In this document: positions 9,001-52,854 of the stretch, one piece after another | How the letters are laid out: every line of letters begins with the position of its first letter | Numbering within the stretch: position 1 is the stretch's first letter | Source: Polymyxa betae A26-41 | Lineage: Eukaryota > Protista > Endomyxa: Phytomyxea | Reading direction: 5' to 3' | NCBI GenBank assembly: GCA_003693705.1 | Contig: RBZT01000499.1 | Coordinates: forward strand, 62,001 to 126,000 | Length of the DNA stretch: 64,000 nt | Notes under the pieces: generated by a model | The model's input: only the letters and a program-made list of their open reading frames with translations | What the model was told of the DNA's origin: nothing | Database searches by the model: none | Translations under genes and position numbers: made by a program

Positions 9001-12000
9001 GACACCAACGACGGTTATCAGATTAACATTGGGGCTGTCAATGGAAGTATTCAGTACTATCGGAGCAGTAGAAGAAACGAAGCTCGTTTGAGAAAACGAA
9101 ATCCCATTGGAGTCTTGAATCTGGATAGTTCCACCAATCCTACTAGCCGAGCCATTAAAGGAGCAAAAAATGGTGCTGTGGGAGACATTAAAAGTAGGCA
9201 TCAGATGGCCGTTAATAACGCAGAAAGAGTTCGCTCTGAATCGTCCACCAGAAACCGAAAATACTGTGTCGGTTACATTTGACTGGACAATCGTCGGTGA
9301 CGATTTTTCAATGTAAGCATTCTGGATAAAGGTAATAATGGCCCAATGACCATCTTCCACTTGGTTATCGACAACAACAGTGACGACAGCTTCGTCAGAG
9401 AATGTTGACGGTAACGTACAAAATCCAGCTGAGCTATTTACGATCGATGCCGGAAGCGGTTCCCAACTGCCCTTTACAATTAGACAGCTGATTTCAGGGA
9501 AACAATATCTACCGACCCGTTGATAAGACAGAATACGTCTCCACTTGTTAGCGAAGTACCACTAAACGTCAATGTGAAATTATCAGCAGAGAACGGAGCA
9601 TTAAACCTATACATTAGTCAAAAAATTTCAAAGGTCGCGAAACGAAAGTGTCATACGTTGAACTCAGCGAGACGGATTGATATACTGGATTTGTGTAATT
9701 GATGATATTGCTAAGAGATAATCATTATCAGCACAGTGGCAAAGCGTTGTCTCTACCTCTGAGAAATTGACATTGACATCGGTACAAAAGAAGATAAGAC
9801 TTTCTGCGGACAGGATACTGAGCTCGTGGAAGTGTATTCTGCCAACTCAGTCGATCCGTCTTGGTAATAGCACAAACTGGAGACTGTATTCGAAAAGTTG
9901 GCTCCTTGTACAATAATATGGTTACGCTATGAGGTATCAGAACAAACTGTGAAATGACAAAATCGCGATTAACTTTAGGAGTAGCTTCGAACAGGACCGG
10001 AATTTTTGCAGTTCGAATGTCGTTTTCAAACAAAACGAGAACATTTGGCAGCCCTGAGGGTACAGCCTCAAATACGATACGAGAGTCCCTCATAGTATAC
10101 GGGATCTGTGAAAGGAAGCTTAAATGAACGTAATGCAGCAAGCGCATCTTGATTACCAAGCAAACGCAGGTAGTACTTGCATCGCATGTTGCAATAGAAA
10201 ATTCAGATAATAATGTGTCTCGCAATGTAAAACGGCACCCTGATGCCAATGATGGTAACAATCCATTCATAATTGTGAAATTGACTTCAGAAATGATGAT
10301 AGGGTTATTCAATTTAACACTCATAGAAGAGCCATAATCCACTCTAGATCGAACTTATTTAACTAAAACAGAACTGTGGTTACAGCTTCATACCTCGGTA
10401 AAGACACCTCTGAGGTTGTCAGCGTCACATTTTTCACAGAGCAGCTAACAGAAAGTCTAGTTAACCCCAGAGACTCACTCAGACCTGGTAATGAGCACAG
10501 AATTGAGGAAGAATTTACAACAGTTGCTGATTTAGCCCAATATGACTCAAATAGACATTCGCATGCAGATGTTGCCAGATTATCATAAACTGATCCGAAG
10601 TTGCCAATGATGACGGAAATATAATCGTGAGAAGACAACTGCCAAGAGAGGGAAACACTTTGAATTTGAATGCTGTTGATTACCTCGATCATGACAGGTT
10701 CTGGGCTTACAACGGATACCTCGTTGTTGGCAGTGATACCAATCTAGCTTCTTGTCAATATGACCCATATATAGAGAGAAATGATTTCCAACCTCCAGCG
10801 ATACATTCGAGCTAGTTGCCTTCAAAAGAAAATCATTCAGTTCGCAGGAAAGCGACGTATTCGACATAACAGAGGCAGGAATGACGTAAGTTGAATCAAG
10901 AACACACAACAATTGATCAGGAAAAAGAAAAGAAGATCCATAAACAGTGACAGCTGGATTGACGGAAGAAGCTGAAATCGTTGATGGGTAAACCGACTTA
11001 AGATCTGCCGACATCCAGTCATGAGACCATCCGAATAGATAGCAAAAATTACCTAAATCAACAAAGGTAAACGCAGCGGTAGTTGGAACAAACTTGGCGG
11101 GAACGATGGTAGAAACTGAGAAGTAATATGTTCCTATTAGAAATTGATTCGCGGGAATTGAAACTGTGATTGATTCCGAAGATAAGATATTGATGTTAGA
11201 AAGAAGAACACCTCCCAGTTTCAAATTGGTGTCGTGAGTGAAGCCACTTCCAGATAATGTAACAGAGGTTTGTGATGAGGTCAGACTGGAAACGTTTGGA
11301 TAACCCTAAGAATAGTGAGCAAAAAATTAAGAATTGCGACATGTTTACATGAATGATGGAAGGTTGTTCTTGGATATAAAGATTGACAAAATTGGACAGG
11401 AAGTTACCAGTAGCGATCTTTACTTCATTGGCTCCAAACCATCCTATTGAGCCAGGAACATTAGCAGAAACCAGACTGGGGTTAGTATTCGTCAGTAGAG
11501 ACTGCCTGATAAGGAGCGAAGAGGAAGAATTGCCCAATCCAGAACCAAGGATCGATAGAGAATTATTGGAACCAGATGCATATAAAATGTTGGGAGAGAG
11601 ACCATAAATCGATGTTCGTATTGGAGATGGGATGGAGATGCTATAGCGGGAAGCAGAAACAACATCAAATTGATCAGAAAGAGTAACAAACGATGCTTTA
11701 AACAAGGGATCAGGTGTTTGACACCATGATGTAGAGCTGTTGATCCATATTGCCACCGATTCCACAGTGGAATAACCGTCACCTGTAAATTAAATCAACT
11801 ACCATCAGTTGTTTCAGTTAAAACACAAACCAAAAGCACAGGTTAATCTAGGAGAGTTACGCAGGCCTCGTCCAGAAACATATAATGCTTGAGCCGGCAC
11901 ATCCAGACGAATGGACAAGATAAAGTTATTATCAAAGAAAACCACCAAGGGCAGCGAGTGCCTGGGGTCTTCAGAAACCGAGTTTGAAATTCCGAAAGAC

Positions 12001-15000
12001 ACAATTCCTGTTTGAGGGGTTAACAACAAGAATACTTTAGCGCTGTGTGATAGACCTAATGGCAACTTTTGTGGAACTGGGCATACCATGCTAGTTGGTG
12101 TGACCAAGTCAGGAGAGCTCATTAAACTTCCAAATCGGCAAACTGGTTCAAGAGCCGTATCGAATCGCCTAAATAACATCAACACAGAATAACTCAAAAC
12201 ACAGAAGACAGACCCAGAAACGGTAATCATGTTATTAGTGCTATTGGAAATAGCATTAGATGACAGACTTGACATTTGAGCTGTTCTAGCAATGGCGATG
12301 TCAAATGTGAGATAAGAATGTAAATCATCAACAAGATCAACAGTGACAGAAGGCGAGGATACTTGCAGAGGAGGTATTGGACAGACAACAAGTGTATCAT
12401 TATTGAAAAACGATTTGAGTATAACGTGAGTATCGAAGACACAGAAAAACGCTCCAAATGGCTGCAAACGCGTTCCTAATCAATAATGAGCACTTCTCAG
12501 CCAAAAACCATTGTCAAAGTCACCATGAAAAGAAACAGAAGCTGATTCGATTGACAGTTCAGAAATGACGCGGGGTTGAAGCTCCTCAATTAGCGCTGAG
12601 CGGAAAGTCGGCAGATCAAAACTATTCGATGAATATAATACGCCTTGCAGATTATCCCTCAAAACAACCTGAAGAAAGAAATCAGTTCAACAGAAAAATC
12701 ACTTGAATGTAATCTTACAGAGACTATCGAATATGGAGCTAAATTTGGAGGAGACAAACAAAGAATTTCTGTTTTAGAAATCCATACAGTGTTTGACAAA
12801 AATGACGATGTGGTGTTGCTGTACAGGCATTTATAAAACCAGGATTTTCCAGCATTAATCCCAAACCCAGAACCAAAGAGCTTCAGTGCTCGGCGAGATC
12901 CAGCTGATGTTTCGGTCAGCATCGGCTTGACAGATGATATTGTAGGAATGTTCACATAATCGAACAAGATGTGCCCAGAAGTTACGTTCCGGTTATCATA
13001 CAATAACTGAATAGTAACTGTAGCTGGAGAGGCATATTGAAGAGTTTGACAGATGAGCGCGGTTGACGACAAAAAATTGCAATGGCCTCTTCCAGCGCCA
13101 ATTCCAATTGTCATGTTCTGAAGGAATCCACTGCCTGAAATGGTAATAGATGCGCCTCCCGCAAGCAAGCCGAATTTGGGGATTATATCAGAAATCTGTG
13201 GGTCTTGTTTAACGATAAACTCTCCAGTATACGACACATTCATATTCGAAGCTAAGGTAACCTGAAGACTGTCGATATAATTAATCGGCAGAGGAGGAGC
13301 AACACAAGTTAAGGTCGTAGAATTGACAAATGCCGAAACGGCTGTGAATGCACCGAAAGTACAAGCAGCCTGATAAATGCTGTTGAAATCTTTCCCAGAA
13401 ATTGTGATGACCTGTCCACCGCTTTCGAAGCTCCATCGAGGGTAGAATGACACAATTTCAGGCAGGTTGATGGTTTGAGAAAGGACAAGCGAATCTAGGG
13501 TTTGGTTAGCAATTTTTCAGATGAGTACCGATATAATTACTCAAGCTAAATGCAGCTCCATCGTTTGACACCCTCACAGTAATGTTATTTCTTGTTGAAA
13601 TACCAGGTGTACGGCATTCAATAGCAGAACCATTTAGAAAATGAGCTTTCACTATGGATTGGCCAAATCGACATGACAGGTTCGGCGCATTCGTGAAGAA
13701 GGAGCCCAGAACCAATAACGTTTCGTTTCCCGGAATTCCAGTAACAACAGGCATCATCTAAATCATGTTAAAAATCAATCCGGAGACACACCAACAAACG
13801 CTTACTGATTTAAGAATGGGTCTCATATAAATTTCCACGAGTGCAGAGAGCTGATTCGTATAGACTGCATCATAATCAGCAACATAGAGCTGAGCTACTC
13901 CTGCAGTTAAATTGGGAAAGTTGCAAACTGTATAGGATGAAGTCCATATTGAAGACCTAACAGTAACATCCCCCATTCGACAGAGCGGACGCTGCGACAG
14001 TACAGGAAAATTACCAGACACGTTGAAGGTAAATAGATTCAAGTCGGATACAGATACGAGATGGACATCAATCAAAGACGGTCTTGGTACAACGGCAAGC
14101 GTTTTGAAAAGAGGAACGATATCGGTCCCCATGAAGATAGAAAATGAGTAGTTACCACTTGGAAGATGAGGGAACACACAGCACATTTGAGTGTTGTTAA
14201 GAAAAGAAACCTTAAGTATGACATCGCCTACTTTGCATCTTGGCGATATGAGCTGTGAGAATCCACTTCCGATCACGGTAACAGAGGCTTTGTAGATTTC
14301 GTTTTACTAAATGAGCAACAAGCAATGCAGCAAAAGTTCTTACCTGAAATTTGTTCATAAAGCTGAAGAGGCCATACATAGGATACAGTTGGAGGAGTGA
14401 TATAGCGAAAGTAAAGAACCTGGTCAGAGAAATCCCATCCGTTTTGTGAAAATTTCACAGGAAGGGTATCGTTGCTTCCAAATGATGGAGTTACGAATGT
14501 AATCTGATTGCTATCTGCAAATTGAGCGACCCAGAAACAGCATAGTACAAACGAACCTGGAAGTAAAAACGGGTTCCACACTCTGGTCACCAAGAGTAAC
14601 TCTCATGCGAGCGAGATTCCTGAAATTGGAGCCAATCATGGTTACGGTTGTGTTGCCGAAAGTGAACCCAGTGGATGGGATCAAGCTATTGACATCGACT
14701 GCCTCGTATATTGTGAAGGTTAACCGGGTGCTTAAAAACAAGTTGAGATCAATAGGATCGCTCACATATATTGGTAACTCTTCAAAACCTATTTAAGCAG
14801 CTTAAAGGTTGCCCACGAACCGGAAATATCAATACCATTGGAAGGAGAGTATGCAGGAGTATTCAAGAGTATCGTCGTAGAATTGATAATGATCGGTACG
14901 ACAGTGAAGCTTGTTAAACCTTGACCAAACCGAATAGTGGATATCACATCGGCTCTAAAACGGGACCCTTTTATGTACAAAGTAGACGTCCCATTTGATG

Positions 15001-18000
15001 GACCACTTTTTGGGAAAATTTCCGATAGAATCGGTGCCGAGAAGAAAGTGGCATTGGAAGGGAAAACGTCGATGGAGTACTTTCCTTCAAGGCCAAATCC
15101 GAAACGAACATCACCATCAATATGCAAAGGCGCTTTGCAATACGCGAACGATTGGTTGACGACCACTGCGTTCGATATTACTGAATCGAAACTGCAAACG
15201 GCGTTTGAAGAATTGTAGAATCCAGAGCCCCAGATATTAACTGAAGACAGTCAATGCGAGAATCGATGTGGACAGAATGCTCGGTTACCTATTGTCTCGT
15301 CAACAGCTGATAATTTTTGCGGATAAAATGTGGAAGGAATCGCATTAGCAATAAGTAAAATTGAGCTATTTGAAAATTCTTGCCCATTATTTGTAACTTG
15401 GACGGAAACGTTTCCAGGGCCATTTCGAGGAATTTGCACATGCAGTTCACTATCCGATACGAAAATCGGTGAGAGAACATCATTTCCAACTTTAGTACGA
15501 AGATAAGGAGAACTGAAGAACCAGCCGCCAAATATCGTTTGCCATCCACCAGAACTGTATAAGCGGCTTGGGAAAATGCCTTTGATGATGGGATCTCGAT
15601 TGAATTTATAGACAATCCACTGCATTGGAGAAAATATTACACCATATACGGATACATCAACGCGAGCAGAGCCAAGCGAAGCTGGCGGTGTGGTGCACAT
15701 TATTCGCTTGTTTGAGATGAAGGTTGCTGAAACAGTCAATATCTCACCTGAGCTGTCATTGAACCGACATTTCAGACTAGAACATTTCAGGCAGTTATTA
15801 GAACAAAGATGATACCACATTACCTATTGTCAGTAAAGCCAGAGCCTGTAAGATAGACGATGGTGCCTCCATTTACAGATCCACTGCTGGGCGTAATTCC
15901 TGTTATGCTTGGCCGAGAGACAACGTTGATGATTGCTGAGCTACCAGTCCATTCAGAATAACCATTCCGAATAGAAATTGAGAAAGGGCCAGCAGTAGCC
16001 CCTGCAGGAACAGAGCAAACGATAGCGGAAGAGTTGATGAATGTAACCGGGTAAACCTCTGATAGGTTGAAAATGCAAGCCGTCCAGTTAGAATTTACAA
16101 AGTTGTTCCCAATTACTGTGAACTGCCGAGATACAGTAACATACGAAGGGACAATCCTGTAGACATTTGCAACTGGATGTAAGTTCATGGTCAAAGGAGT
16201 TGTGAACTCAAGCAGGTTGTTAGTTATTCGAATAGAAACATTTGTATATGGGGATGATGCCGCTGGACTTGAGCACACCACTGTTTCAGGATCAACAAAT
16301 TTGGCAGGTATCAAAGCACTCTGATGAGTGAAACGGCATGACAAATATTTGCTGTTGATGAAATTTCTCCCTAATATAGCGCTCAGCGACATCTGATTCC
16401 ATGACCATTGCCCGTACCGAAAATAGTTATAATCGAGGATTTGTCCAAAGGAATAGAAGCCGGTGACCAGATTTTACGCAGCATTGGAGGCTTTGATATC
16501 AAGAGCTGCAAACCTGTAGCTGAGAAGTCGCAGTTGTTGTTCGACACTCGTAGATAAATAACGTTGAGAGCTAATATATCAAAAGTCAATTTCGGCAATC
16601 ATAGAAGCAAATGATAGTCCAAACCTCTAGCAGCTGAAGGAACGGGACATTGAACCATACTTGGAGATACAAATATCGCCTTGGAAAAGACATCGCCAAT
16701 CTGGCATGAAAGCAATGCGTTAGAAACAAATCCACTTCCGGTGACATTCACAGCAACGTAATTGCCTAAATTCAAAGTAAGTTGACTCGGTTTTCGTGGG
16801 AAAAGCATAGACGCTACTTGTATCAGTCGAAACTGTATTGGGAGAGACAGTGAACAGCACTGGTAATGGCAAGTATGCGAACAGCAAAGAGTTAGTGGAA
16901 TCTTGTCCATTGGTAGTGATTGAGAAGGACACAGTTGAATAATTTGTTGCAGAAGGTGAATAGCAAACTAACGAAGTGGAGTTGACAAACTGGGAAAATA
17001 CCCTTGAATTGCCAAATTGACACGCCAAGCGGCTTGTGCTTAGAAAGCCGTTTCCCGTCACTGTTATTGGTGTACGACCAGATAGAGAGCCTGTCAATGG
17101 CGATATTGACGTAATCGATGGTTGTGTGTAGTAAGTGAAGGGCACTTGATAATCAGTATAATCGCGACCGTTATTGCTCAGTTCAAGTGCGACCGAACCA
17201 ATCGACATTGCCGGAGAGATACAAATTATATGATTTTGATCGAGGACTTCAGCTCTAACAACCGAATTCCCAAATTTGCAAGAGATACTCCTGAAAAAAT
17301 TCGCACCAAAAACTGTAACCGTCGTGTTGCCCGTTGACGGTCCATAGTCAATAGATAAACGTTCGATCCAAATGTCTGGAATTATCTCTGCGAAAACTTG
17401 GTTAGTAGAAATTTGCTGGCCATTTTCACTGGTCGAGATAAAAATGGACCCCAGCACGATTTCGTCAGGAATCGAGCACACAACTTCCGTACTGCTAATA
17501 ACGACAGATGATTCCCAATATGTCGAATTAAACACGCATTGGGTCACCCCATAAAGAAATCCAGATCCAGTAATTAGAACAGTTCTGTTCAAAGATGACT
17601 GAGTTATGATGGACGGAGAGACAGAATAAACAGCCGAAGGCGTGCGATAAATGAACATAACAGCATTAGAGAAATCCTGGCCATTGTTTGCTACGGATAC
17701 CAGAACTGATCCTGACAATATATCAAGGAGTTTGCAAATAACCTAATATCAATAAGTTGAAATGCCAAATATGGCCGTCATCAACATACGAGTCTAGGGC
17801 TGATAAACCGTAACTCAGATTGGAGTGTCCCGATATTACAAGAAGCCAACGATGAACTTCTGAATCCGGACCCGAAAACTGACAGCAGCATCGCACCAGT
17901 TCCGTTTGTTGGGTGTAGCGATCTTAAGCAAAGGTGAGTCTTGCAAAAACATATTTTCGTGCTGACTTACTGAATAACAGGTTTGCTTTCCACATTTAAC

Positions 18001-20301
18001 ATCAATTTATCAGGACCGTAATGCCATCCCCCGTTAACTGAAACATCCACTGGTATAGCTGAAGGCACGTTAAAGCCAAATACGGGAGTTGGGCATCTGA
18101 GAACGGAGCTTGATAACCAGATTGCATTTACTGTGCTCGACTCATTGAATCTACACATTAACGAACTTGATCGAGGAAATCCATTTCCGTATATCAACAG
18201 GTTGGTGGTACCACTTCCAGAAATGAAGCTTGGTGTGGCCTATCAATAATAGTTATCATAAATTCAGATACAGTGCCTCAATAATAACCTTAAAGAGCTG
18301 TGGGGGTTGAAAGAAAGTAATGAAGTGATTAGAAGGCCAAAAGTCCCAAAGGTTGTCGCTCGCCGCGACTTTTACCGGGAGACCAGTTGCCACAGTAGTT
18401 GGCAGAGAACAGCTAATACTGTGGAACAGATTCAATAATTAGGGAGAAAATAAACAGATCCATACGTTGTACTGTTTATCATCTGAGCAGGAACAACTTC
18501 ATCATTGAACCTGCAGCGAAAGCCTCCGCCGTAAGTTCGAAAGTTATTGCTAATTAGAAGAATGGAAGTATTCAATGAAACGGGAATTGATGGCGGTGTA
18601 ATAGAGCTGATCTGGAGACATCTAGAAGAAGGAATTACTAACACACAGGCAGTGCAGCACATAATGTACCTATAGCAAAAATCGAAATAGACGTTCGTAG
18701 TCTGAAAATCTGCAGCGTTATTGGAGACCGCTAGCAAGACTGTTGACAGTGTCTGCAGAGGATTGGCTTGCCTAGGTGTGACACAGATGATGACCGAGTT
18801 GTTAATGAATGTTGCAGATGACGACTGAAACCCAAATCGGCAGGTTAATAAGGACGACTGGATGAATCCAGTACCAAATATGGATACGGGAGTTCCACCG
18901 GAGCTTGACCCAAACGAGGGCAAAATCCTCGAAACTGCAGGTATATCGTAGTAGAGGAACGTCGCATTAGTGACGGAAAAGTCCAAGCCATTGGACGACA
19001 CAGCTATTTGCACAGGGCCGACGGGAGCACTCGGCGAAGAGCAAACCAATGTGGTCGAGTTGATAACGGTCGCTGACACCAAATTTGAGCCGAATCTCAC
19101 ATAGACGTTGGGACCAGGGAAGAAGTTGTTGCCGATGACGGTTACAATTGTAGATCCAGTGATAGGACCCAATTCAGGATTAGCCGAAATGACCTGCGGT
19201 GATCGAAGACACAGCAGTGAGACAGAATTAGAAGTTCCCAGATTAGATCCAGTAAAGATTTGCAATCGCATCAAAGACGTCGTTGTCACCTGTTTGGGAG
19301 CAGAATCACATTGAAGATAGGTCGAATTCAGAAACTGGACAGATACAGAAGTGAGGTCGTCAAAGACACATTTGGTCGAGGAGTCCATAACAAATCCAGA
19401 ACCGATCACTGTCAGACGTGTACCACCGCCAGACATCACGGTTGATGGATAAACCGATGCGATTTGTATAGAAGGTGCTCTATTAACAGTAGCAGTGACA
19501 CTTTCTGAATAGTCAAATCCATTGAAGGATAATGCAATCGAAGAAGGCAAACGGTATAAATCCCAGCTTGACCTGCACGTGACTGCTGTTGAATTGATGA
19601 ACGTCCCTGAAATGAATGTGGTGAAGATTCGACAAGTTATAGTTCTTGACTTGAAAAATCCAGATCCCACAACAGTTATGATAGTTCCTGTTCTAAGCGG
19701 GGAAACCGCTGGATGAGCATACGAAATCGTCGGCATATTGTAGTAGAAGAACGAAATGTTGTCACTTGTATAATCAACGCCATTGTTGGAGACTTCAACA
19801 AAAACCGTCGCCGATGTGTTATGTGATGGAGCAAAACATCTTATGGCATTGGATGACAGAGAATATCCTAATGGTCAAATCAGTATAGAACGGTCATGCA
19901 AAAGCATTTACCAATAACGACACTAGAGCCGAATTTGCAAAGAGGGTTCGAGGCAAAATTCACCCCAAAGACTGTCACCAATGTTCCACCAGAAGTTGGC
20001 CCCAATGCAACAGAAACATTCTGCACTCTTGGAGGCTGAAAGTATTTGATGAGCTTCTGAGACCTTGACCAGGAAACATTGCCATTCGGAGACACCTCTA
20101 AAAGCACTAATTCAACAAAGATTGTGTTTGTAATTAGGGCTATAGAATAATACCGATGTGGTCGAATAAAGTCGAACGAGATGGCACTATACATTGCAGA
20201 GTGGTATCATTGATGGCGGTGGCCGGGGTCCAGATTGTATTTGCCGCTGCTATTGTCACACACAGCACTAAAATCGTCCAAACAATTTGACCGGTTTGCA
20301 T
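1..20301 (-). CDS. Giant multi-exon secreted/surface protein: signal peptide, dozens of tandem IPT/TIG (Ig-like) domains, then a Cys-rich GCC2/GCC3 (ephrin-receptor-like) repeat region; 3' end runs off the window
   Basis: ATG at 20301 gives MQTGQIVWTILVLCVTIAAANTIWT, a hydrophobic signal peptide. Successive minus-strand ORFs joined by ~50-nt GT-AG introns repeat the IPT pattern PxxGPxxGGTxVTVxGxxF...CxFG...C (e.g. 18432-19736, 16720-17718, 12659-13453). From ~2290 to ~280 the product switches to CPxGxYC repeats (CPPGQYQPESGQSRCLPCP, CPPGSYCPVGS). I cannot exclude that this is two adjacent genes. Confidence 0.8.
545..561. repeat. Short telomere-like repeat (AACCCTAAAACCCTAAA) inside an intron
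   Basis: About two CCCTAAAA/TTTTAGGG units within the minus-strand intron between ...SCVEG and YVCDQ... Confidence 0.6.
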
Positions 20302-38665: not shown

Positions 38666-41600
38666 CTATTCATTTAGGCATTTTTGATCAGGATTATTTG
38701 GTTGAACCTCTACTTGATTCAATGGATGATATCTTTCTGGTTGCATATCGTTTAGATACGTCGAATGCCTCAGTATGCCGAATATAAACACTTTAACTGC
38801 ATCCTGTATGATAAACCAGATGAAACAGTAAATCCAGACGAACAAGACGTGAGTAATGCTGATTCCTTGGCCGCCTTCGTCAGTGAATGGCCAAGTAATA
38901 GATAGGATCGTTGACGCCGACAATGCACACAAAGCAGCACCAAGAAGAACGATGCTGATGTTTGTTCAGCAGGTCCAATTACGTTACATATGCATTATAG
39001 ATACCTTGGTCTTGAAGAAAAGCATGGTTTCGTTCCGGTTCTTGCAGCGAAGATGGTCAAAAAATCGGACAGACTGATTTTCACTAATGCAACTTTAAGA
39101 AAAAGAATACTGGCAACTGGAAGATAGACTTACGATACATTGATGTGATGACAGCATCATAATTAAGCCCCGATAAGCCAAGTGATTGGTAGAACGAGCC
39201 CGATCTAATTGTAAGTAAGTATGAACAGCAAATTGGCAGTAATCTGAGCAGTGCCGAACCTATTTGACTCCAAGGCTAGATGCAATAAAAGTAGTGATGA
39301 TGCACATGCCACAGAGCCGAGTGTCAAAGCTAAAGCCCAGAGACGTTTCATATTCCATGTCTGTGGTGCTTTCGGCGCCACAACGCGATCATATGCGATG
39401 CTGACCTGAAATCATTTCCATTCAGATGTCATCAAACGACAGATGATCACTTTACAATTGTTCCATCATTCAACACTGTAATCACGATTAAGGCAATGAC
39501 AGGCATTTTCCAAAATTTCGGAAAGGTGGGGTTGTAGGATTCAGGCGGTAATGCAAGAACAGCGATAAAGAAGAAAACCAAGAGCTGGAAGGTAGCAGCG
39601 ACACGATATACCAGAAATGAGTGCATGCGGCAGAAGATTCGGCGAGCAATGATGATAGCCTAAACCCTGTGTCAACTGACAACCCACTCAAGCAATAAGA
39701 TTTGGGAACCTCAACGATAGCATTCAATCCCGGTGCTGTGAGGACAATGTGTGCCGCCGCCCTGGCAGCATCTGTCGCACCTTGTACAGCCTTCGCAGAA
39801 TGATATGGAATGGGTTTTCATGCAATTTAATGTGGAACTTACCACTCCAACACTGGCAACCTTCAAGGCTGGAGCATCATTGATACCATCCCCTGTCATT
39901 CCACAGATAAAGCCGGCTTGCTTCAAAGCTTCTACAATCACATATTTGTGTTCTGGCAAAGCTTGAGAGAACCCGTCTTTTGACCTTTGCACAAAATGAG
40001 TTTTGAGTTAGAGAACAGTCTCAAATCTTGAATCACAAGATCATTTGAGCATAGTCCCGGCCAAGAGTGGAAGGAACTTTGGCCTTTCCTTCTTCCATAG
40101 TAATAGGCGGTAATGTGTTTTTGTCACAATGAGCAATATTGGCTTTTCCTAGCTCCAAAGCCTTAAAGACCATTTAGCAACCAGAAATAATGCTTGTCGA
40201 ATGTCTACCTTGGCGGTCTCAATAGCAATCAGTTGATGATCTCCCGTAATCATTTTTATGGTGACCCCAAATTCTTTGGCTTTTTTTATAGTAGCCTTAG
40301 AATCAGGTCTAAAGGAACAAATGATTCATATGTCTAATGCCAGGGTCGCACAGATAAATGACCTTGGAGGGTCCAGAAAAGTCAGCAGTCCAAGCATCTC
40401 AAAACAGTCCTCTTGATTAGTCCTGGCGACTGCCAGCGTACGAACTCCTCGACCTGCTAAGTCTATTACAGTTAACTCTAACGCTTTCTGGAACCAATTC
40501 AGAACAAAGCCTGATGTAACTACAGTGACATCCTTACAGCAATTTTGTCCTTGTTATGACATAACGCAAGTAAGACGTGAGGAGCGCCTTTGGTCACACG
40601 AAATTTCTCACCTGGGCAGACAATGAAATTCCTGATGAGCGATCAAATCTAGCGGGAACCTGTTGCAATGTTGACAACAGTAGATTCTGTCCTCTTAATC
40701 GTGGCATCAAATGGTATATATGCAACCTGACTATATTTGTTACATTCTTCTAGATCCGCGGCTGTTAAAACCTAAACTAGATTAACTCGATTATGGACTT
40801 AGATAGAACACCACACCATAGTATCGAGAGCATCTTTCGGTGGCTCCTTCCATTTTGCTGCTAAAGCAGAAGAGAGCAGGACGTGATCTCTTGTTGTTGT
40901 TGGACTGAAGACAGGACATTCATTTTGAATGACCATTTTGTTTAGAGTTAAAGTGCCGGTCTTATCAGAACAGAGGATCTGCATTCCGGCCAACCGCTCA
41001 ATAGCAGATAAATGTGCAGCAATCGCCTATATGCGCCATAAGCAAGTGTATATCATCGAGCGGAATCTCTTCACCTTATGAGAAGACAATTCTCTACTAC
41101 CAAGCGCCAATGTTGCAGTAACAACGACTTCCATTGCCAGTGGAATTGAGGCGACCATAAGAACCACAACGAACCTGGCAAGAGAATTCAGTTTCAAGAT
41201 GAATGTCAGTTCAATATCATGTTTAACCCTATAGAGCTACGCCAGGGCTGGTCAGAGAGTAAAAGATAAACCAATGTGATTCCACAAAGAATGATAGATA
41301 AACTCAAGAGCACCCAGACAACGCGAAGCAAGAGTTTCTGCAATTCACCAAGTTCATTGCCGTGTGATTGCAGCAAAGCAGCCGTCTTTCCATAGAAAGT
41401 GTTCATGCCTGTGGCAACAACGGTCGCCTCGACCTCTCCTCTCGCTACTGTAGATCCCATCTGGGCCTGCTGCCCTTTCTCTAGGCGAACAGGAAGCGAT
41501 TCGCCTTTGTAAGACACTTAAAGACCGAAGTTGCTTTTTAACAAGAATATCACCTGTCAAGGCTGATTGATCAACATTGACAACGCCCTCATTAACAACG

Positions 41601-42496
41601 CAATCAGCAGGAACAGCTGAACCGCTTGACAGTACGACACAATCGCCTGGGACCACTAAGGCGGCATCTATAGTTTTCCAGCGACCGTCACGTTTTACTT
41701 GGGCGACTACAATAGCGTAAATCAATCCAGAATATATATAACGAAAGAGGCAGACTAACCCGGCTTGAGAGAAGCCTTTAATGCTGCAATAGCATTGCCA
41801 GCCTTATTAGCTTCAAGAAAACCAACACCACCGTTTATCATTTGCAGACAAAAGAGAATGATGCAATCCAGCCAGTTATCAAGGACAGCTTCAATTACAA
41901 TGGCGAACCATATTCCAATTGGCATTGGAGCTGTGAATTGCTCCACGAAAAGCTTCCATTTCGGCTTGACGTATTCTTTTAATTCGTTACGTCCATGTTT
42001 TTTGAGAAGCTCATCGGCATCATGCTGAGTGATTCCATGAGAGATATGGAATTCCTGAAGATTATCACCAAACATGTTACAAAGAGGCGAAGTAGTTTAC
42101 AGGTTGACTCAGCAGATCGTGGCTAGAGAGTTGTTGTTTGTCGCTACGTGCTGAATGAAACGTCTCTTGAATCTCATTCATTGGAACTCGTGGTGAAGCG
42201 GCATGTTGTGCAAGCTCTAATGAAACTTTGCTGTTTGTGACACGTTCCGTAGGGGATTCAGCAGGATCATCAGTAAGGAGGTCGAATTTGCTCGACCGAT
42301 GATGAAGTTGATAGAGAACGACCTCGTCTGAAAGATCTGCTGCACGGTCGACTGCATTCGAGGCGTTATTTGCATGCGCAAGGTTGGCATTCATATTCGA
42401 GGCAGCGCCGACATTTGTGGAGTGCAAGTCTGGTGAGTTTTGTTCATTGTCAGCTGCTATGTATGAATTCCGTTTCAATGAACCATCTGCTGCCAT
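38666..42496 (-). CDS. PMA1: Plasma-membrane P3A H+-ATPase, catalytically intact, intron-rich
   Basis: Spliced motifs [61 protein letters not shown]5 YRVAAT and TM6 VLNDGTI. There is a long low-complexity N-terminal extension. Confidence 0.93.
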
Positions 42497-44345: not shown

Positions 44346-45065
44346 TTACTGGGTGTTAGAAATGCGAGAAGTCTTGCGGCTGGCTTTTCTCTGAGCCTTG
44401 CGGTCCTTCTCTTCCTTCATACGCAGGTTAACCAGAGCATCGTATTCGTCAGCGGTAGCCTTGCTCTTCTCAATACGAGCACGGCGTTCAGCGATCCAGC
44501 GGCGCTTGCGCTGTAAACGCTGAGGAGTGACCAGACGCTGGATTTTAGGGGCCTTGGTGAAGGTTTTGTCACCCTTGGTGATCTTACGCTTGATAACGTA
44601 GGCGCGGACGTCATCCTCCTTGTCCAAGTTGAACAGCTTACGGATGCGGGTGGCACGCTTAGGTCCCAGACGACGGGGCTTGACGTCATCAGTCAGGCCT
44701 TCGATCTCCTTGTCGCCCTTCTTGGTGACGACCAGATGGACGACAGACAGGTCGGAGCTGACAATGCAACCACGAACCGACTTGCGCTTACGCTCACCCT
44801 TGGTACGGGGCCTGTAGCAGGAGCTGCCTTTCTTCAGCAACAAACGAACACGACCGTTAGTAAGGACACCCTGTTTCATGGGGAAACCCTGTTTGTCATT
44901 TCCTCCCATAATTTTGAAGCTGTATCCGGTGAATTCTTCACCCAAATCGTCACCGTTTACTTCATGGGAGATTCGCTTGTCGTACAAAGCAATCAGTTTC
45001 TTGTCGTCATCGATGGTGATGCATTTTTGCAAGCCCGTCGCCGGGTAAGAGATGTTGAGCTTCAT
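44346..45065 (-). CDS. RPS6: 40S ribosomal protein S6 (intronless)
   Basis: [15 protein letters not shown]...[16 protein letters not shown]...RKSVRGCIV...LGPKRA...[11 protein letters not shown], with strong codon bias. Confidence 0.99.
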
Positions 45066-45300
45066 GACGACGACGGAGATCTCTGTTCAAGCCAAACTGG
45101 ATAAGGCCTGGGAATGCGTGCGGAGTCCGTGGCATCCTATTAGCGCCTGTCTCATATAAAACTCCTGTGTTTTCGCCAGATATTAGATGATTTACTTGGC
45201 TTTACAGTTCTTCATTCTTATTCAGGATTTATTTAGTCTGGTTTAACAAACAATGGCTGGTTAAAATGTTTGGGCTTTTGACAATCAGATAGTTTCGTTA

Positions 45301-46595
45301 TTACAGTAACCCAATGTCGCTCAGAGACCTCCTTATAACAATGTCTTTTACAGCTGTAAATACATGCAGTATATTTTCGCTGTCTGTAGCACACGTTATA
45401 TGAGTGTATACAGGTTTGTTAGCGATCAAATTCCTAGCCTACAGAAACCTCAGGTTAAATGTAGTCCAGCATTTGCTGTTCACTTACTTCAAAGGCTTGC
45501 TTGATGTACTGTGCACATGGTTCAAATTCCTGCTGTCCAAAATATTGTGGAAAGCAAACGTTCAAATGCACAAGCTTAATCTTTTCAGCGAATAGGTCAC
45601 TTTTGTTAAGGAACAGTATGACTGGAGTCGATTGAAACCATTCCGAATTGACAATGTCGCCGAATAGCTGTAAGGCCTCTTGCATCCTATTGGTGGTACC
45701 ATCTTCATATAGCACTTGGTCATAATCATTCATGGCTGCAACGAATATAACCGCTGTTACAGAATCAAAGCAATGGACTAAAACACAAGAGACCCCGAAG
45801 TTAGAGAAATGAACAAGTATGATGCTGTCAACGTACTCCATTTTTTTCGTTCGTTGCGTTGACCACCAACATCAAACATCTGAAATCTGCTGTTCTCGAT
45901 TTCGAACTCGGTCTCAACAATTCCCGATGTTCTCACTCTTGACCTCAATATATCGTCTTCGGTAGGACAATAAGTAGGGCTACATACTTCATCGATCTTG
46001 TCAAAAAACCAGTTTGAGTTATCCGTCAGCTGGAATTTGCTTCTATTAATAAAGGTCATGCGAACCCCCGGATCAATCCATAACTGTTTGATATGGTATC
46101 CCATTTCAGGAGTTAGTATGCTGTCTGGCCTCAGGGACATAACAGCCTGAGCATGATCGCGGTTTTGAACTTTGATTTGGGTATCTAAATGGGGATATTT
46201 CTGTTTTAAACGTTCCGTATTCCTGACGAGAGTTTGAATAGCCGAGATGACATTAGCAAAAATGATATGGTCGTATTTCTGCCTTTCTTCTTTAGTATAC
46301 CCATGACCGTATAGTTTATTTATCTGCCTAGTAACAACATTGAGTTTGGCACATCAACATAAATGCGAAATAGAAACAATGGGTACGAACACAGTCCAAA
46401 TCAAAGATGAAAAAATGCATGAGCTTACTTGAACAGAGTGCTCTTTCCAGATTCACCTGCACCAAGCAGCAGAAGTTTTTTTACTTCTGCAGCGGCAGCC
46501 ATTTCTTTGGCAGCTGCAGACTCGATATCTTTCGAGTGAGCCTGCTCTCGCATCCATTCGGTTGCAAGACATGTCATGCCGCATATGCCAACCAT
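45301..46595 (-). CDS. Heterotrimeric G-protein alpha subunit
   Basis: G1 [18 protein letters not shown]2 [10 protein letters not shown]3 [13 protein letters not shown]4 FLNKSD, G5 TCATD, C-terminus SLSDIGLL*. Confidence 0.95.
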
Positions 46596-46973
46596 TTCTT
46601 CCTCGTGATCAACAATCGGGGAGTTACTTCGAGGTTTGGGCCCCTGAGGGCCCGACTCGATTCGATGCAGGATTGATGCAGACTACGCCAATACTTATTA
46701 ATTCTGCTGGAAACAGGGTGAGTGCATAGACTCCCCAGCTGCAATTGATCAAGCCCTTTGGCAATTTTCAGTCGCCACCCAATAGGAAATATCTCGGTCG
46801 ACGGATCGATCTAACTGATGGGAGGATCGTGCCATGGAAATCTGGAAGAAAGCTTATTTATATCCTACAGGTCTCTTATAGTGTTCTGTATGCAACCAAT
46901 AAAACTCTGCCTATATTATGTCATTACCTGTAATGAATATACCGCGTACACCAGCATTGTCTCTCTTTCTTCA

Positions 46974-48492
46974 ATGAAGAAGAGACATCAGGTCTTCGGC
47001 TCTAATGATAATGAACACCATCTGACATCTCTTGTTCGACTGCAAGAGTCGTATGGAACTGGTCTTTGGAAAAAAGAGATTACGTTCAGAATCGGCGCAG
47101 TGCATCCGGTCGAACGTTCCAGCTGGACCAAGGTTCTCTTCCCACAGATTTGTTTCTCTTGTTAGACTCAAAACGGAATCTGGGTGCTTAGGAGCTTCTC
47201 TCGCTTGTTTTGCCTCATGGATATCCGGATTCAGTAACTCCTGATTATGTTCCATTTCAGTTTTGGGATACAGTTCAGGCGTTATCGACTTATCTACGAG
47301 GCATTCTCTGTAGGATGGAATCAGCAATCTTTTTTTGAACTCGAGTTGATTCGGGTTAGGCCAGCAATCCTTGCTGTTAGGCCTTGGAGTTGGCGATGCA
47401 TCGGCTAGTGCCGTATCAGCAGCATTGTCGTGGACGTTCCTCTGTATTGAAGATGGCAAAGTTCTTTGGGTTGATAGCTGATTCGTTCTTAGCAGGAATC
47501 TCAATGCTAGGTGGAATTATCTTCGCTTTTCAGATATCGGTCGAATTTGGAGCAGATCCTAAACGCTGGAGACTGTTTGCAGAGTAGGCATCGATCTAAT
47601 GTATTCTTTTGGCTCTAATCTTTTTCTAAGCGTTATCAATGATGTGGGTTTAACTTTAACTTTATTTGCACCGGTTGCAGGGCCTTTGTTCTTGATATTG
47701 GCAAGTCTGGGGTCTGTCTGCACAGCTATTTGTGGCGTCGCTGCAGGCGCTACAAAGGCTGCTATCGCTCAGCATTTTGTAAAACAAAAGTCGAATGCCG
47801 CATTGATATCCGACCTTCATGCCAAGGAGGGCACACAGGAAACAATTGTCTCGATTTCTGGGCTGGTTTTAGGTTCTGCTTTAGCATATTTTATCGGCGA
47901 ATCGCTGCTTCTTCGCTGGATTGTATTCCTTTCTTTAACGGCGATTCACATTTTCGCTAATTACTATGCTGTTTTCTCTCTTTGCTTCAATACGTTGAAT
48001 GCACAGAGAGCGTTGATATTGATCGATCATTTCAGTAAAGTCGGCACTGTTTTGAATCCTTCTGAAGTATCCAGTCGCGAGCTTGTTTGGAGAAGGGCTG
48101 CATTAGCTCCAATCGCAATGGGAATACCTTTGCATTCATTAGTGTAAAAACGCCCACAGCAAATTTCATTCTATCTGATCTGTTGTAGATATAACGAAAA
48201 GACATATGAATGGTATCAAACTATAATTGCACAAGATCCTTCCAGGCGCTATATTGTGCATGAAAGCACAGGCAGAGTGAACGTTCTATTGCATGAGTAT
48301 GCAGACGCCACAGATATATTGCAGGCATATTTTGAAGCGAACCGTGCACAGAAGCTTGGGGTCAGTGCAGCTAGGAATGAGTTTGATTCAATTTTTCCTG
48401 TATTCTTCACCGAGTTAAAACAGAAAGGATGGGTCGTAGATCAGATGATGATTCCTGATGAAAGTTGGCGGTGTCACTGGAATAAGCAATAG
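46974..48492 (+). CDS. RUS1/RUSF1 (DUF647) family membrane protein; start uncertain
   Basis: Motifs LPHGYPDSVTPDYVPFQFWDTVQALSTYLRGIL, ADPKRWRLFA, CGVAAGATKAAIAQHF, DLHAKEGTQET, HIFANYYAV..L.FNTLN.QR. Confidence 0.88.
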
Positions 48493-48520
48493 TTTAATGA
48501 CTGCAAAGTACATCAGAATG

Positions 48521-49063
<543 letters not shown>

Positions 49064-50008: not shown

Positions 50009-52854
50009 TTACGCTTCGTTATCAGTTTCGTTTGTGTCCGTAAATCTTGATACAAACATTTTGATAAAGTCCAGCGGTATGATGAGAAGAAAAGCCCAGA
50101 ACCAGGCGAAGATGGCAGTCGCTGGACCCACGCCTGCGAAGTACGTACGCGCTGAAAAGATTCTTCCAAAACCGAGCGTCCCCAACAAAGTCGAGATCAG
50201 CTGGGCAGCAAAAAAAGCGAAAATGAGCCAGTTGCTAGGTCGAGAACGCCACATGGAGCCTTTTGTTCTGGCCGAAAAAATGACTGCATGACCGGTAATC
50301 GAGACGACCAGATAGATGAGACTTCGAAGCTTAGCGAGCCGTGTTTGCTGGACACCACATACAGCTTGTGCTAATGCCGCAAGACAGACATTTGTCTCTG
50401 CACCGCCATTTCTCGTCTCCTGATAATATCTCCAAACATTGTTTTCATATGCGGCCTTGTTCGTCAGAACAGCACTATTCCGACATTCGCTCAATCCGAC
50501 CGGAACCGGACTGAACCAGAGCTCCCAGTTGCATACCGGATCACCACGTCCATCTGTTCGAAACGGGCTTCCATACGACTTCAATGAATCGAGTTTGAGC
50601 ACAGTGAAGATTGAGCTATGACGAGCGAGAACGAAGAGAAGCAATGTGCCTAATGACAACCATACACCGAGGGCGAACGCATGAATGAAAATTGAACGTA
50701 GGTTCCAGCGTTCAGGTTGAGAGGAGCGGGCGGTGTTATCCTTGGAGATAGTCATCAACGCACCATGATTCAGCACCGTCATAATCAAGATGCAGAACGC
50801 CGGGAAGTACCAATCGTAGAATAAAGTCAACAAACCGAAGGTTAATACGATTTGGACGGTGGCGACTAAGTTGAACAGAACGTACGCGTGAATACGACGG
50901 AAAATGGTTCGGCTCAGCATCACAGCTTCAATGATAACAGCCAGACCTAAGACAGAATGTTAGACCTGTTTGAGAATGTATTTAATTTGTCATTACCTGG
51001 TACTAACAAAACGACATCAGAGGCGGATCGAGCTGATACGACCGAACCAGGAACGGCGATGCCAATATCGGCTTTCTGCAACGCTGCACAATCATTGACG
51101 CTGGTCCCAGATATACCGACAATATGGTCGCGCTTCTGCAGACGATCGACGATCGAGAATTTGTGCTTCGGGAACAGTTCTGCGAATCCATCTGCATTCT
51201 CAACGGCAGCAGGCTCGGAGTTCTCTTCAACAGCTGCACCAGTTTGCAGGTTTGATGGGACTCCCAGAATTTTACACGTCTCGACGGCGCTGGCCAGCTG
51301 CTCGCCGGTAACCAGTTTGACGTCGACGCCAATCTCTTTGGCGTCTTGAAGCGAGTTGGCACAATCAGCTCGAAGCGGATCCTTCATGGCCAATAATCCG
51401 ACCAATTCCCAGTTCACTTTGTCAATAGGCATATCAGCAGGATCTCGAGATACTGCAACACCAAGTACACTGTGCCCGCGACCGGCAAGATCACTGATCT
51501 TCGTTTCAATTTCACTCTTGAGAAGCTCGGAATACTGGTCCATCATCATCATGACCCAAGGAGCACCTTTAGCAGCTCGGAACGTGTTGCCATTAGCGCG
51601 AACTCGAACGGAAGCGATGGTTCGTTTCTGGAGTGGATCGAAAGGAACGTAATGGAGGCGTTCGAGCTCAACCCAAAGCGTATCCTTCTGAGGACAGGAC
51701 TCGGTCACGACCTTGTCGATGTCGTCGGTAGGTTCAGGCTCAGCAGCGACGGCGGCATAGAACAGGACCTCTTCGACTTTGTGACCATTGACAGCAACCG
51801 TTTCCGATTCAACAATCTCAGCCTGGCCAGTACAGATTGTACCGGATTTGTTGGCGCAGAGAATATCCATGGACGCCAGCTCTTCGATTGCGGTCAAACG
51901 ACGAACAATGATATTTCTTTTGGCGAGGGCGATCGCACCAAGCGCCATAATCATCGACAATACTGTTGGCATGGCGATCGGTACAGCACCAATGATCAAA
52001 ACCATCACGTTGGCGACGGCACTTTTCCATGGACGGGCTCGAATAAAGACCTGGACCACGATCTCCAAAACGATCATAACGGCAATGAAACTGATCGAGA
52101 AGTTTCCAATGTTCGTCATAATGCTTTGTAGACGACCTTTGTGACGCTTACTGAGAAGCTCGACTGCTTTACCAAAGAAGGTTTCGTTGCCGATTGCAAA
52201 GACGACAGCCTCGCCGGTCCCCGTCTTAATTGCAGCTCCACTAAAGCAGACGTCTCCCTGATTTTTGTTCGATGATTTCTCTTGACCAGTAAGTGCTGCT
52301 TCATCACAACGTAGAACACCATTGGTAAGAAGTTTACAATCTGCAGGTACAACATCCCCGTCCTGAATTGATACGACATCGCCAATTGTCAGCTGTGACG
52401 CGTAGATCTCCCGCCAGGTACCGCCCCGTTTCACATGGCATTTCAATGCCAGCTGATCCTTGAGTTGTGAGGCGGCATTCGATGACGTATTATCGCCATA
52501 GAAACAGATTAGAGCGTTGATGACCAACATGAGAACAATGATGGAAGCGTCCATCCATTGGCCGAATATCAGGGCGACGAGTACGGCCAGCTCCAACATC
52601 CAGGCTAATGGGTTCCATAGAAACCACAACGTTGATCTCAGACGGCTCGGCTGATCAACGTTGATCTCGTTGGTGCCGTACAGCGATTGCCGGGCGGAGA
52701 TCTCCGACTCAGATAAGCCATCGGGCGACGACTTCAATTTGGCGAGGGCGTCCTCAACCGACATCTGCTGCCATTCGACAAAGTTTGCATTTGATTCGAT
52801 TTCGTTTTGACCGATGCTGTCGACGACGACGCTGTCCTTGTCGGCAGCCGTCAT
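50009..52854 (-). CDS. P3A H+-ATPase-like protein with substituted catalytic residues (predicted inactive pseudo-pump), ~931 aa, single intron 50947-50996
   Basis: Full P3A architecture (FLWNPLAWMLE, VPADC, TFFGKA, VPIAMPTVLS, LTAIEELASMDILC, PFDP, KGAP, DPLR, ADGFAELFPKHKF, PERWNL). Key motifs are altered: CANKSGT, LTGQE, VTGEQ, GISGTSVND and VLNHGALMT. Confidence 0.9.

What the first reader, a model, noticed from the sequence alone, without database searches (positions are those of the whole stretch)
50009..52854. Intact but catalytically disarmed P-type H+-ATPase: a candidate conserved 'pseudo-pump'
Seen: an uninterrupted ~931-aa ORF with one clean 50-nt intron and codon bias resembling nearby RPS6. 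All four motifs needed for the phosphoenzyme cycle are changed. DKTGTLT becomes NKSGTIC (AAC at 51850-51852), actuator TGES becomes TGQE (~52280), P-domain TGD becomes TGE (~51305) and hinge GDGVND becomes GTSVND (~51100). The N-domain motifs (PFDP, KGAP, DPLR), the TM4 motif PIAMPTV and the membrane scaffold are kept. Established: the Asp of DKTGT is the obligatory phosphorylation site of P-type ATPases, D->N abolishes pumping, and the TGES Glu drives dephosphorylation. Inference: targeted loss of catalytic residues with no stops or frameshifts argues against a decaying pseudogene or a single sequencing error. It suggests a repurposed protein such as an ATP-sensing membrane receptor, a passive conduit, or a regulatory subunit of oligomeric PMA pumps.
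Basis: partly seen in the sequence, partly recalled or inferred. Interest (0 to 1): 0.92.

Follow-up and report, generated by a model that had tools for sequence, protein, structure and literature searches.

The report
Conserved dead proton-pump homologue in plasmodiophorids
Three genera of root-parasitic protists (Polymyxa, Spongospora, Plasmodiophora) keep an intact copy of a plasma-membrane proton pump that has lost the residues needed to split ATP, so it probably now serves as a membrane docking or sensing protein instead of a pump.

Summary
Confirmed and extended. The window is almost certainly Polymyxa betae (assembly size match). The 931-aa, two-exon gene is a P3A H+-ATPase homologue lacking the phosphorylated Asp (NKSGT), the TGES Glu, TGD and GDGVND. 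It also lacks the proton-site Asp/Arg and the N-domain ATP-binding Arg. Orthologues in Spongospora (same D-to-N and E-to-Q; from a transcriptome) and Plasmodiophora (further eroded, two assemblies) are dead too. They form one clade (99/99), sister to an intact environmental gene that is also linked to RPS6. This excludes a sequencing error and makes a decaying pseudogene unlikely. P. betae has no active pump of this subfamily in the assembly; it has four intact pumps of a distant P3A subfamily. Conservation is inverted: P-domain and TM1-6 erode, while non-pocket N-domain residues, TM7-10 and a four-Cys outer loop are kept. This favours a docking/sensing scaffold over ATP sensor or proton leak. 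Function is untested; P. betae reads and expression could not be checked. No description found in the literature searched. The scan had not noted this on other DNA.

The parts
50997..52854 (-). Exon 1: TM1-4, A-, N- and most of P-domain
   Evidence: (AHA2 5ksd E 5e-129)
50947..50996 (-). 50-nt GT-AG intron
   Evidence: removal restores frame and alignment to the Spongospora protein
50009..50946 (-). Exon 2: TM5-10, outer loop, stop
52495..52497 (-). G120, replaces TM2 Glu at the proton entry (AHA2 E113); lost in all three orthologues
52279..52284 (-). TGES>TGQE; E>Q shared by all three orthologues
51844..51852 (-). DKT>NKS, phosphorylation Asp lost (Spongospora NKS, Plasmodiophora motif gone)
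51388..51819 (-). N-domain (res 346-489): 51/144 positions invariant in the three dead orthologues, 35 of them clade-specific
51469..51471 (-). S462, replaces the nucleotide-binding Arg (AHA2 R456; SERCA R560 by motif)
51301..51303 (-). TGD>TGE
51076..51105 (-). GDGVNDAPALK>GTSVNDCAALQ
50852..50854 (-). Q651, replaces TM5 Arg (AHA2 R655); Polymyxa only
50765..50767 (-). H680, replaces TM6 proton-site Asp (AHA2 D684); Polymyxa only
50339..50614 (-). TM7-TM8 outer loop, about 92 aa, four Cys and a DPxCNWELxF motif kept in all three
38702..42066 (-). Neighbouring intact P3A pump of the SIPxAxE subfamily (16 introns in the modelled part)
44346..45065 (-). RPS6, linkage marker shared with the intact environmental orthologue

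Best explanation
A single-copy pseudoenzyme descended from a plant-type (PIAMP) P3A H+-ATPase. Catalysis was lost once, before Polymyxa, Spongospora and Plasmodiophora split (shown by tree and shared substitutions). It cannot form or hydrolyse the aspartyl-phosphate, so it does not pump (follows from established P-type chemistry). Pumping is left to four intact pumps of another P3A subfamily (genes shown, activity inferred). The protein is still selected (shown indirectly). Inferred role: a ten-helix membrane scaffold or sensor that binds partner proteins through its N-domain and faces outward through the TM7-10 block and a probably disulfide-bonded four-Cys loop. These parts were largely present in the active ancestor, so a side function outlived the pump function.
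For: Shared lesions E191Q, D335N/T337S, E120G, R462 loss, K593Q. Tree (ENA active,(Plasmodiophora,(window,Spongospora))) with 100/100, 99/99, 99/98; alternative with the active gene inside rejected, p-AU 0.012. Open frames in four independent sequences; window vs Plasmodiophora pS 0.74 (saturated), dN 0.74, dN/dS about 0.25 or lower; a 932-codon frame survived 5% random substitution in 0.3% of simulations. N/P identity ratio 1.89 in the dead trio against median 0.40, max 0.72 in 4060 active trios; TM7-10/TM1-6 ratio 1.52 against max 1.16. Family-conserved columns kept in all three: P1 3/21, P2 18/73, TM1-2 5/25, TM8-10 9/10. Spongospora protein folds as a full P3A (pLDDT 88.6, pTM 0.86; TM 0.77 to AHA2). 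Single copy in G000; four intact paralogues.
Against: No partner, localisation or phenotype is known. The active sister shows the same N/P ratio against the window protein (1.04) as Spongospora does, so part of the N-domain signal is inherited and the strong inversion rests on Plasmodiophora. The Plasmodiophora branch is very long (3.07), which also fits partial relaxation. dS is saturated and GC3 differs (0.54 vs 0.93). The model's confidence owes much to active homologues in the alignment. That the kept N-domain residues are surface-exposed was not measured.
Confidence: 0.5

Rival explanations
1. Non-pumping regulatory or trafficking subunit of the parasite's active P3A pumps, working like petunia PH1 with PH5.
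For: PH1 has no H+ transport of its own yet boosts PH5 across subfamilies; P3A pumps oligomerise (PMC10654040). TM7-10 are well kept. An active pump lies 7.5 kb away.
Against: No same-subfamily active pump in the assembly; the four active ones are about 30% identical and far away in the tree. The Plasmodiophora orthologue shows no such neighbour.
Confidence: 0.2
2. Passive channel or leak (H+ or another small ion) built on the pump's membrane domain.
For: Ten-helix fold and the TM4 proline motif are kept; Spongospora keeps N106, R655 and D684 equivalents.
Against: Polymyxa lost D684 and R655, Plasmodiophora lost N106, all lost E113; TM1-6 are among the least conserved parts.
Confidence: 0.1
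3. Relic under weak selection, slowly decaying after the other P3A subfamily took over.
For: Progressive, lineage-specific losses; very long Plasmodiophora branch with low-complexity insertions in the P-domain.
Against: No stop or frameshift in any of four sequences despite saturated dS; invariant Cys/Trp motifs; Spongospora sequence comes from a transcriptome project.
Confidence: 0.08
4. ATP or nucleotide sensor using the N-domain pocket.
For: D380, F405, K429, L464 are kept in Polymyxa and Spongospora; N is the best kept cytosolic domain.
Against: The Arg equivalent to SERCA R560 (important for nucleotide binding, PMC11977196) is lost in all three; Plasmodiophora lost D, F and K as well.
Confidence: 0.07
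5. Still an active pump (RNA editing, assembly error or alternative chemistry).
For: Spongospora protein passes the TIGR01647 cut-off (752 vs 615.5 bits); raw reads not seen.
Against: Same D>N and E>Q in a transcript-derived protein of another genus; at least eight separate catalytic or transport positions changed; published assembly coverage 225x.
Confidence: 0.04

Closest known systems
P3A plasma-membrane H+-ATPases (AHA2, Pma1; TIGR01647), plant-type PIAMP subfamily
   Same: Ancestry, domain order, ten-helix fold, about 40% identity to plant pumps; nearest active relative 46% (P0002).
   Different: Phosphorylation Asp, TGES Glu, Mg-site and ATP Arg lost; in Polymyxa also D684 and R655; long four-Cys outer loop; short C-terminus.
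Degenerate flippase module of P4-ATPase-guanylate cyclases (Plasmodium GC-beta, Cryptosporidium, Tetrahymena)
   Same: Natural loss of the DKTGT Asp and A-domain Glu with the fold kept; supporting role suggested (PMC13466520).
   Different: P4 family and fused to a cyclase that explains retention; here a stand-alone P3A with no attached output domain.
Petunia/citrus PH1 (P3B) in the PH1-PH5 complex
   Same: P-type protein without its own H+ transport that acts through another pump (PMC10654040).
   Different: PH1 is P3B; from memory it keeps DKTGT and lacks the TM6 Asp (not checked here); partnership is shown for PH1, untested here.

Membership tests
P3A H+-ATPase (by descent) | Best match to P3A profile and structures | tested here: met
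   Exon 1 alone 594 bits on TIGR01647; Spongospora orthologue over cut-off; PDB best AHA2/Pma1
P3A H+-ATPase (by descent) | TM4 PIAMP-type motif and ten TM helices | tested here: met
Active P-type ATPase | Phosphorylated Asp in DKTGT | tested here: not met
   NKSGT
Active P-type ATPase | TGES Glu in A-domain | tested here: not met
   TGQE
Active P-type ATPase | TGD and GDGxND P-domain motifs | tested here: not met
   TGE, GTSVND
Active P3A pump | Proton site N106/R655/D684 | tested here: not met
   N kept, Q651, H680
Active P3A pump | ATP hydrolysis coupled to H+ export | not testable with these tools
   needs biochemistry
Pseudoenzyme | Fold kept, catalytic residues lost | tested here: met
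   (model made of the Spongospora orthologue)
Pseudoenzyme | Purifying selection across orthologues | tested here: met
   open frames, saturated dS, dN/dS about 0.25 or lower; estimate is rough
Pseudoenzyme | Expressed | tested here: inconclusive
   Spongospora entry CRZ06243 most likely from the 2015 transcriptome; P. betae runs not available; six supplement searches for the gene ids blank
PH1-like accessory subunit | Binds and boosts an active P3A pump | not testable with these tools
   candidate partners exist
P4-ATPase-guanylate cyclase | P4 family, fused cyclase | tested here: not met
   P3A family; ORF ends about 12 residues after TM10

The most novel reading that the evidence does not exclude
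The first conserved, stand-alone pseudo-pump family of the P3A class: a proton pump turned into a receptor-like or scaffold membrane protein at the origin of plant-parasitic plasmodiophorids, without a surviving active twin, with parallel cases in Agaricomycete fungi and bacteria.
Probability: 0.45. Interest if true: 0.88.

Novelty: new variant of a known kind. Interest (0 to 1): 0.74.

Why it matters
Pseudoenzymes are well known among kinases, but natural stand-alone P-type ATPases with no catalytic Asp are hardly described; the literature searched gave only fused flippase modules and PH1. Three orthologues at graded stages of erosion plus an intact sister give a natural series that shows which parts of a P-type pump have a pump-independent job. 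It also corrects annotation: UniProt lists the Spongospora protein as 'Plasma membrane ATPase'. A lineage-specific membrane protein with a conserved outer loop is a useful lead for the cell biology of clubroot, powdery scab and the rhizomania vector.

Tried and rejected
The joined two-exon protein was never sent to a search tool; searches were exon by exon or with the Spongospora protein, and the joined model was used only in local scripts. JGI metagenome scan gave one unrelated 26% hit. No DNA for the Spongospora gene or the ENA contigs, so the ENA organism is unidentified and no close-range dN/dS was possible. First structure model with six sequences was poor (pLDDT 62). Atlas search of the outer loop gave no usable match. 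Gene ids were not found in papers or supplements. Rejected: recent duplicate of an active paralogue (none of this subfamily in G000); gap artefact in P. brassicae e3 (the N-run is closed by an independent contig with the same erosion); codon bias as evidence.

Full report
Source. The window is G000:C574:62001-126000 of a 27,085,814-base, 1001-contig assembly. The published Polymyxa betae draft has 1,001 contigs, 27,085,946 bp and 225x coverage (PMC6328671). With the protein's sister position to Spongospora, the organism is almost certainly P. betae, a plasmodiophorid.

Observation. The gene runs 52854 to 50009 on the minus strand with one 50-nt GT-AG intron at 50996-50947, giving 931 aa with no stop. 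It is a P3A homologue: best PDB match AHA2 at E 5e-129, 594 bits on TIGR01647 for exon 1 alone. All four motif changes are as reported. Each lost residue is present in 29 of 29 active comparators. Further losses: the TM6 proton-site Asp (AHA2 D684) is His, the TM5 Arg (R655) is Gln, the TM2 Glu (E113) is Gly, DPPR is DPLR, and the xRxL Arg of the N-domain (AHA2 R456) is Ser. D684 is indispensable for transport and R655A does not complement (PMC5387105). The matching SERCA R560 matters for nucleotide binding (PMC11977196; the equivalence is by motif, from my own knowledge). The codon-bias argument is weak.

Orthologues. The top hit is Spongospora subterranea A0A0H5QW77/CRZ06243, 59% identical over exon 1, with NKSGT, TGQI, TSD and GDGVHD. 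It most likely derives from the 2015 transcriptome. Plasmodiophora brassicae PBRA_007898 is a third member. Its e3 model spans an assembly gap, but a 99% identical, intronless 1064-aa protein from an independent run closes it: TSQT for TGES, no DKTGT, no DPPR or TGD, GTSGSH for GDGVND, PWSP for PFDP, IGTP for KGAP. The nearest intact relative is an ENA assembly protein (P0002/P0121) with every motif present. Its gene lies next to RPS6; RPS6 lies 4.9 kb from the window gene, in a different orientation. This suggests the same ancestral locus. The P. brassicae locus shows no synteny with the window.

Tree. IQ-TREE with LG+C20 gives (ENA active,(Plasmodiophora,(window,Spongospora))) at 100/100, 99/99 and 99/98 (wider quick tree). 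Placing the active gene with window plus Spongospora is rejected at p-AU 0.012, with the caveat that the Plasmodiophora branch is long. Shared E>Q, a shared deletion in the TM3-4 loop and a shared outer-loop motif agree with one loss. Rows were chosen by me from search hits; fungal Pma1-type and many SAR sequences are thinly sampled.

Paralogues. The gene is single copy. No second PIAMP-type gene appeared in four searches of the genome, though the draft is about 91% complete by CEGMA. Four intron-rich P3A genes (C839, C252, C992, and one in this window) give 844-879-aa models without stops and with TGES, DKTGT, DPPR, TGD and GDGxND intact (the C252 model is the least certain). They belong to the distant SIPxAxE subfamily. 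No intact PIAMP-type protein from Spongospora or Plasmodiophora appeared among the top hits either, which is weaker evidence.

Selection. Window against Plasmodiophora: pS 0.74, fourfold sites 74% different (saturated), dN 0.74, so dN/dS is about 0.25 or lower. A frame this long stayed open in 0.3% of simulations at only 5% random substitution. A neutrally decaying gene would be broken.

What is kept. In active P3A pumps the P-domain is the most conserved cytosolic part and the N-domain the least. In the dead trio this is reversed: N 0.35, P 0.19, ratio 1.89, against median 0.40 and maximum 0.72 over 4060 active trios; TM7-10 over TM1-6 is 1.52 against a maximum of 1.16. Of 51 invariant N-domain positions, 35 are clade-specific and most are shared with the active sister, while the nucleotide-pocket residues are not invariant. 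The TM7-8 loop has four Cys and 22 invariant positions; the active sister and some holozoan pumps also have a Cys-rich loop here, so the loop predates the loss. An AlphaFold model of the Spongospora protein has a full P3A fold (pLDDT 88.6; TM 0.77 to AHA2).

Mechanism. Shown: catalytic residues absent, one origin, intact frames, inverted conservation, other intact pumps present. From established chemistry: no phosphoenzyme, no pumping (about 95%). Inferred: the protein works by binding. I favour a membrane scaffold or sensor that docks cytosolic partners on the N-domain and faces the outside through TM7-10 and the loop (0.5). Rivals: accessory subunit of the other pumps (0.2), passive leak (0.1), slow relic (0.08), ATP sensor (0.07), still active (0.04).

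Known systems. Natural loss of the Asp and Glu is described for flippase modules fused to guanylate cyclases (PMC13466520). PH1 is a non-pumping helper of PH5 (PMC10654040). Ten full-text searches found no description of this protein or of a stand-alone dead P3A family (notably); the library lacks most subscription journals. Other motif-dead P3A proteins occur independently in Artomyces, Trametes and two bacteria-like contigs, so the route may recur.

Limits. The joined spliced protein was left out of all database searches. Two earlier first-reader notes on this window (membrane-site changes and loop; neighbouring active pump) agree with what I had already found.

Verdict. Real, conserved, apparently undescribed P3A pseudo-pump of plasmodiophorids; a new variant of a known kind; interest 0.74.

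Noticed in passing
window 38702-42066 (-): Intact SIPLAMEVV-type P3A pump with 16 short introns, 7.5 kb downstream of the pseudo-pump; three more such genes on C839, C252, C992.
   Followed up: yes
P0273 (Artomyces KAI0061826), P0305 (Trametes KAI0632034): Motif-dead plant-like P3A proteins (EKTGT/GKTGS, TGEP) forming their own long-branch clade beside a Dissophora pump; a possible second pseudo-pump family in Agaricomycetes.
   Followed up: partly
P0302 (L055:5001-7487), P0340: Two prokaryote-type P3A proteins with TGQS/TGQW and DKQGT/NKTGT that group together; P0302 follows a two-component system.
   Followed up: partly
ENA ERZ27279858 and ERZ23498364 (P0002, P0121): Unidentified eukaryote, probably a phytomyxid, with an intact orthologue next to RPS6 and an apparent 54-nt intron near the 5' end.
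   Followed up: partly
L040 (G000:C818:20.7-23.2 kb): P-type ATPase whose motifs look MgtA/P3B-like; unusual in a rhizarian if confirmed.
   Followed up: no
G000 C889, C68, C959, C890, C439, C628, C208, C738: Several expanded sets of other P2-like ATPases, some in tandem or inverted pairs, with intact motifs where checked.
   Followed up: no
window about 4900-20200 (-): Long run of ORFs with IPT/TIG repeats, likely one giant surface-protein gene.
   Followed up: no
window 44346-49039: RPS6, a G-alpha, a RUS/UVB-sensing family gene and a centrin-like EF-hand gene lie between the two P3A genes.
   Followed up: partly
L054 / P0404 residues about 520-680: The P. brassicae orthologue carries Ser/Gly/Asp-rich insertions inside the eroded P-domain, and both it and the window protein have G-T-S at the GDG position while Spongospora keeps GDG.
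   Followed up: no
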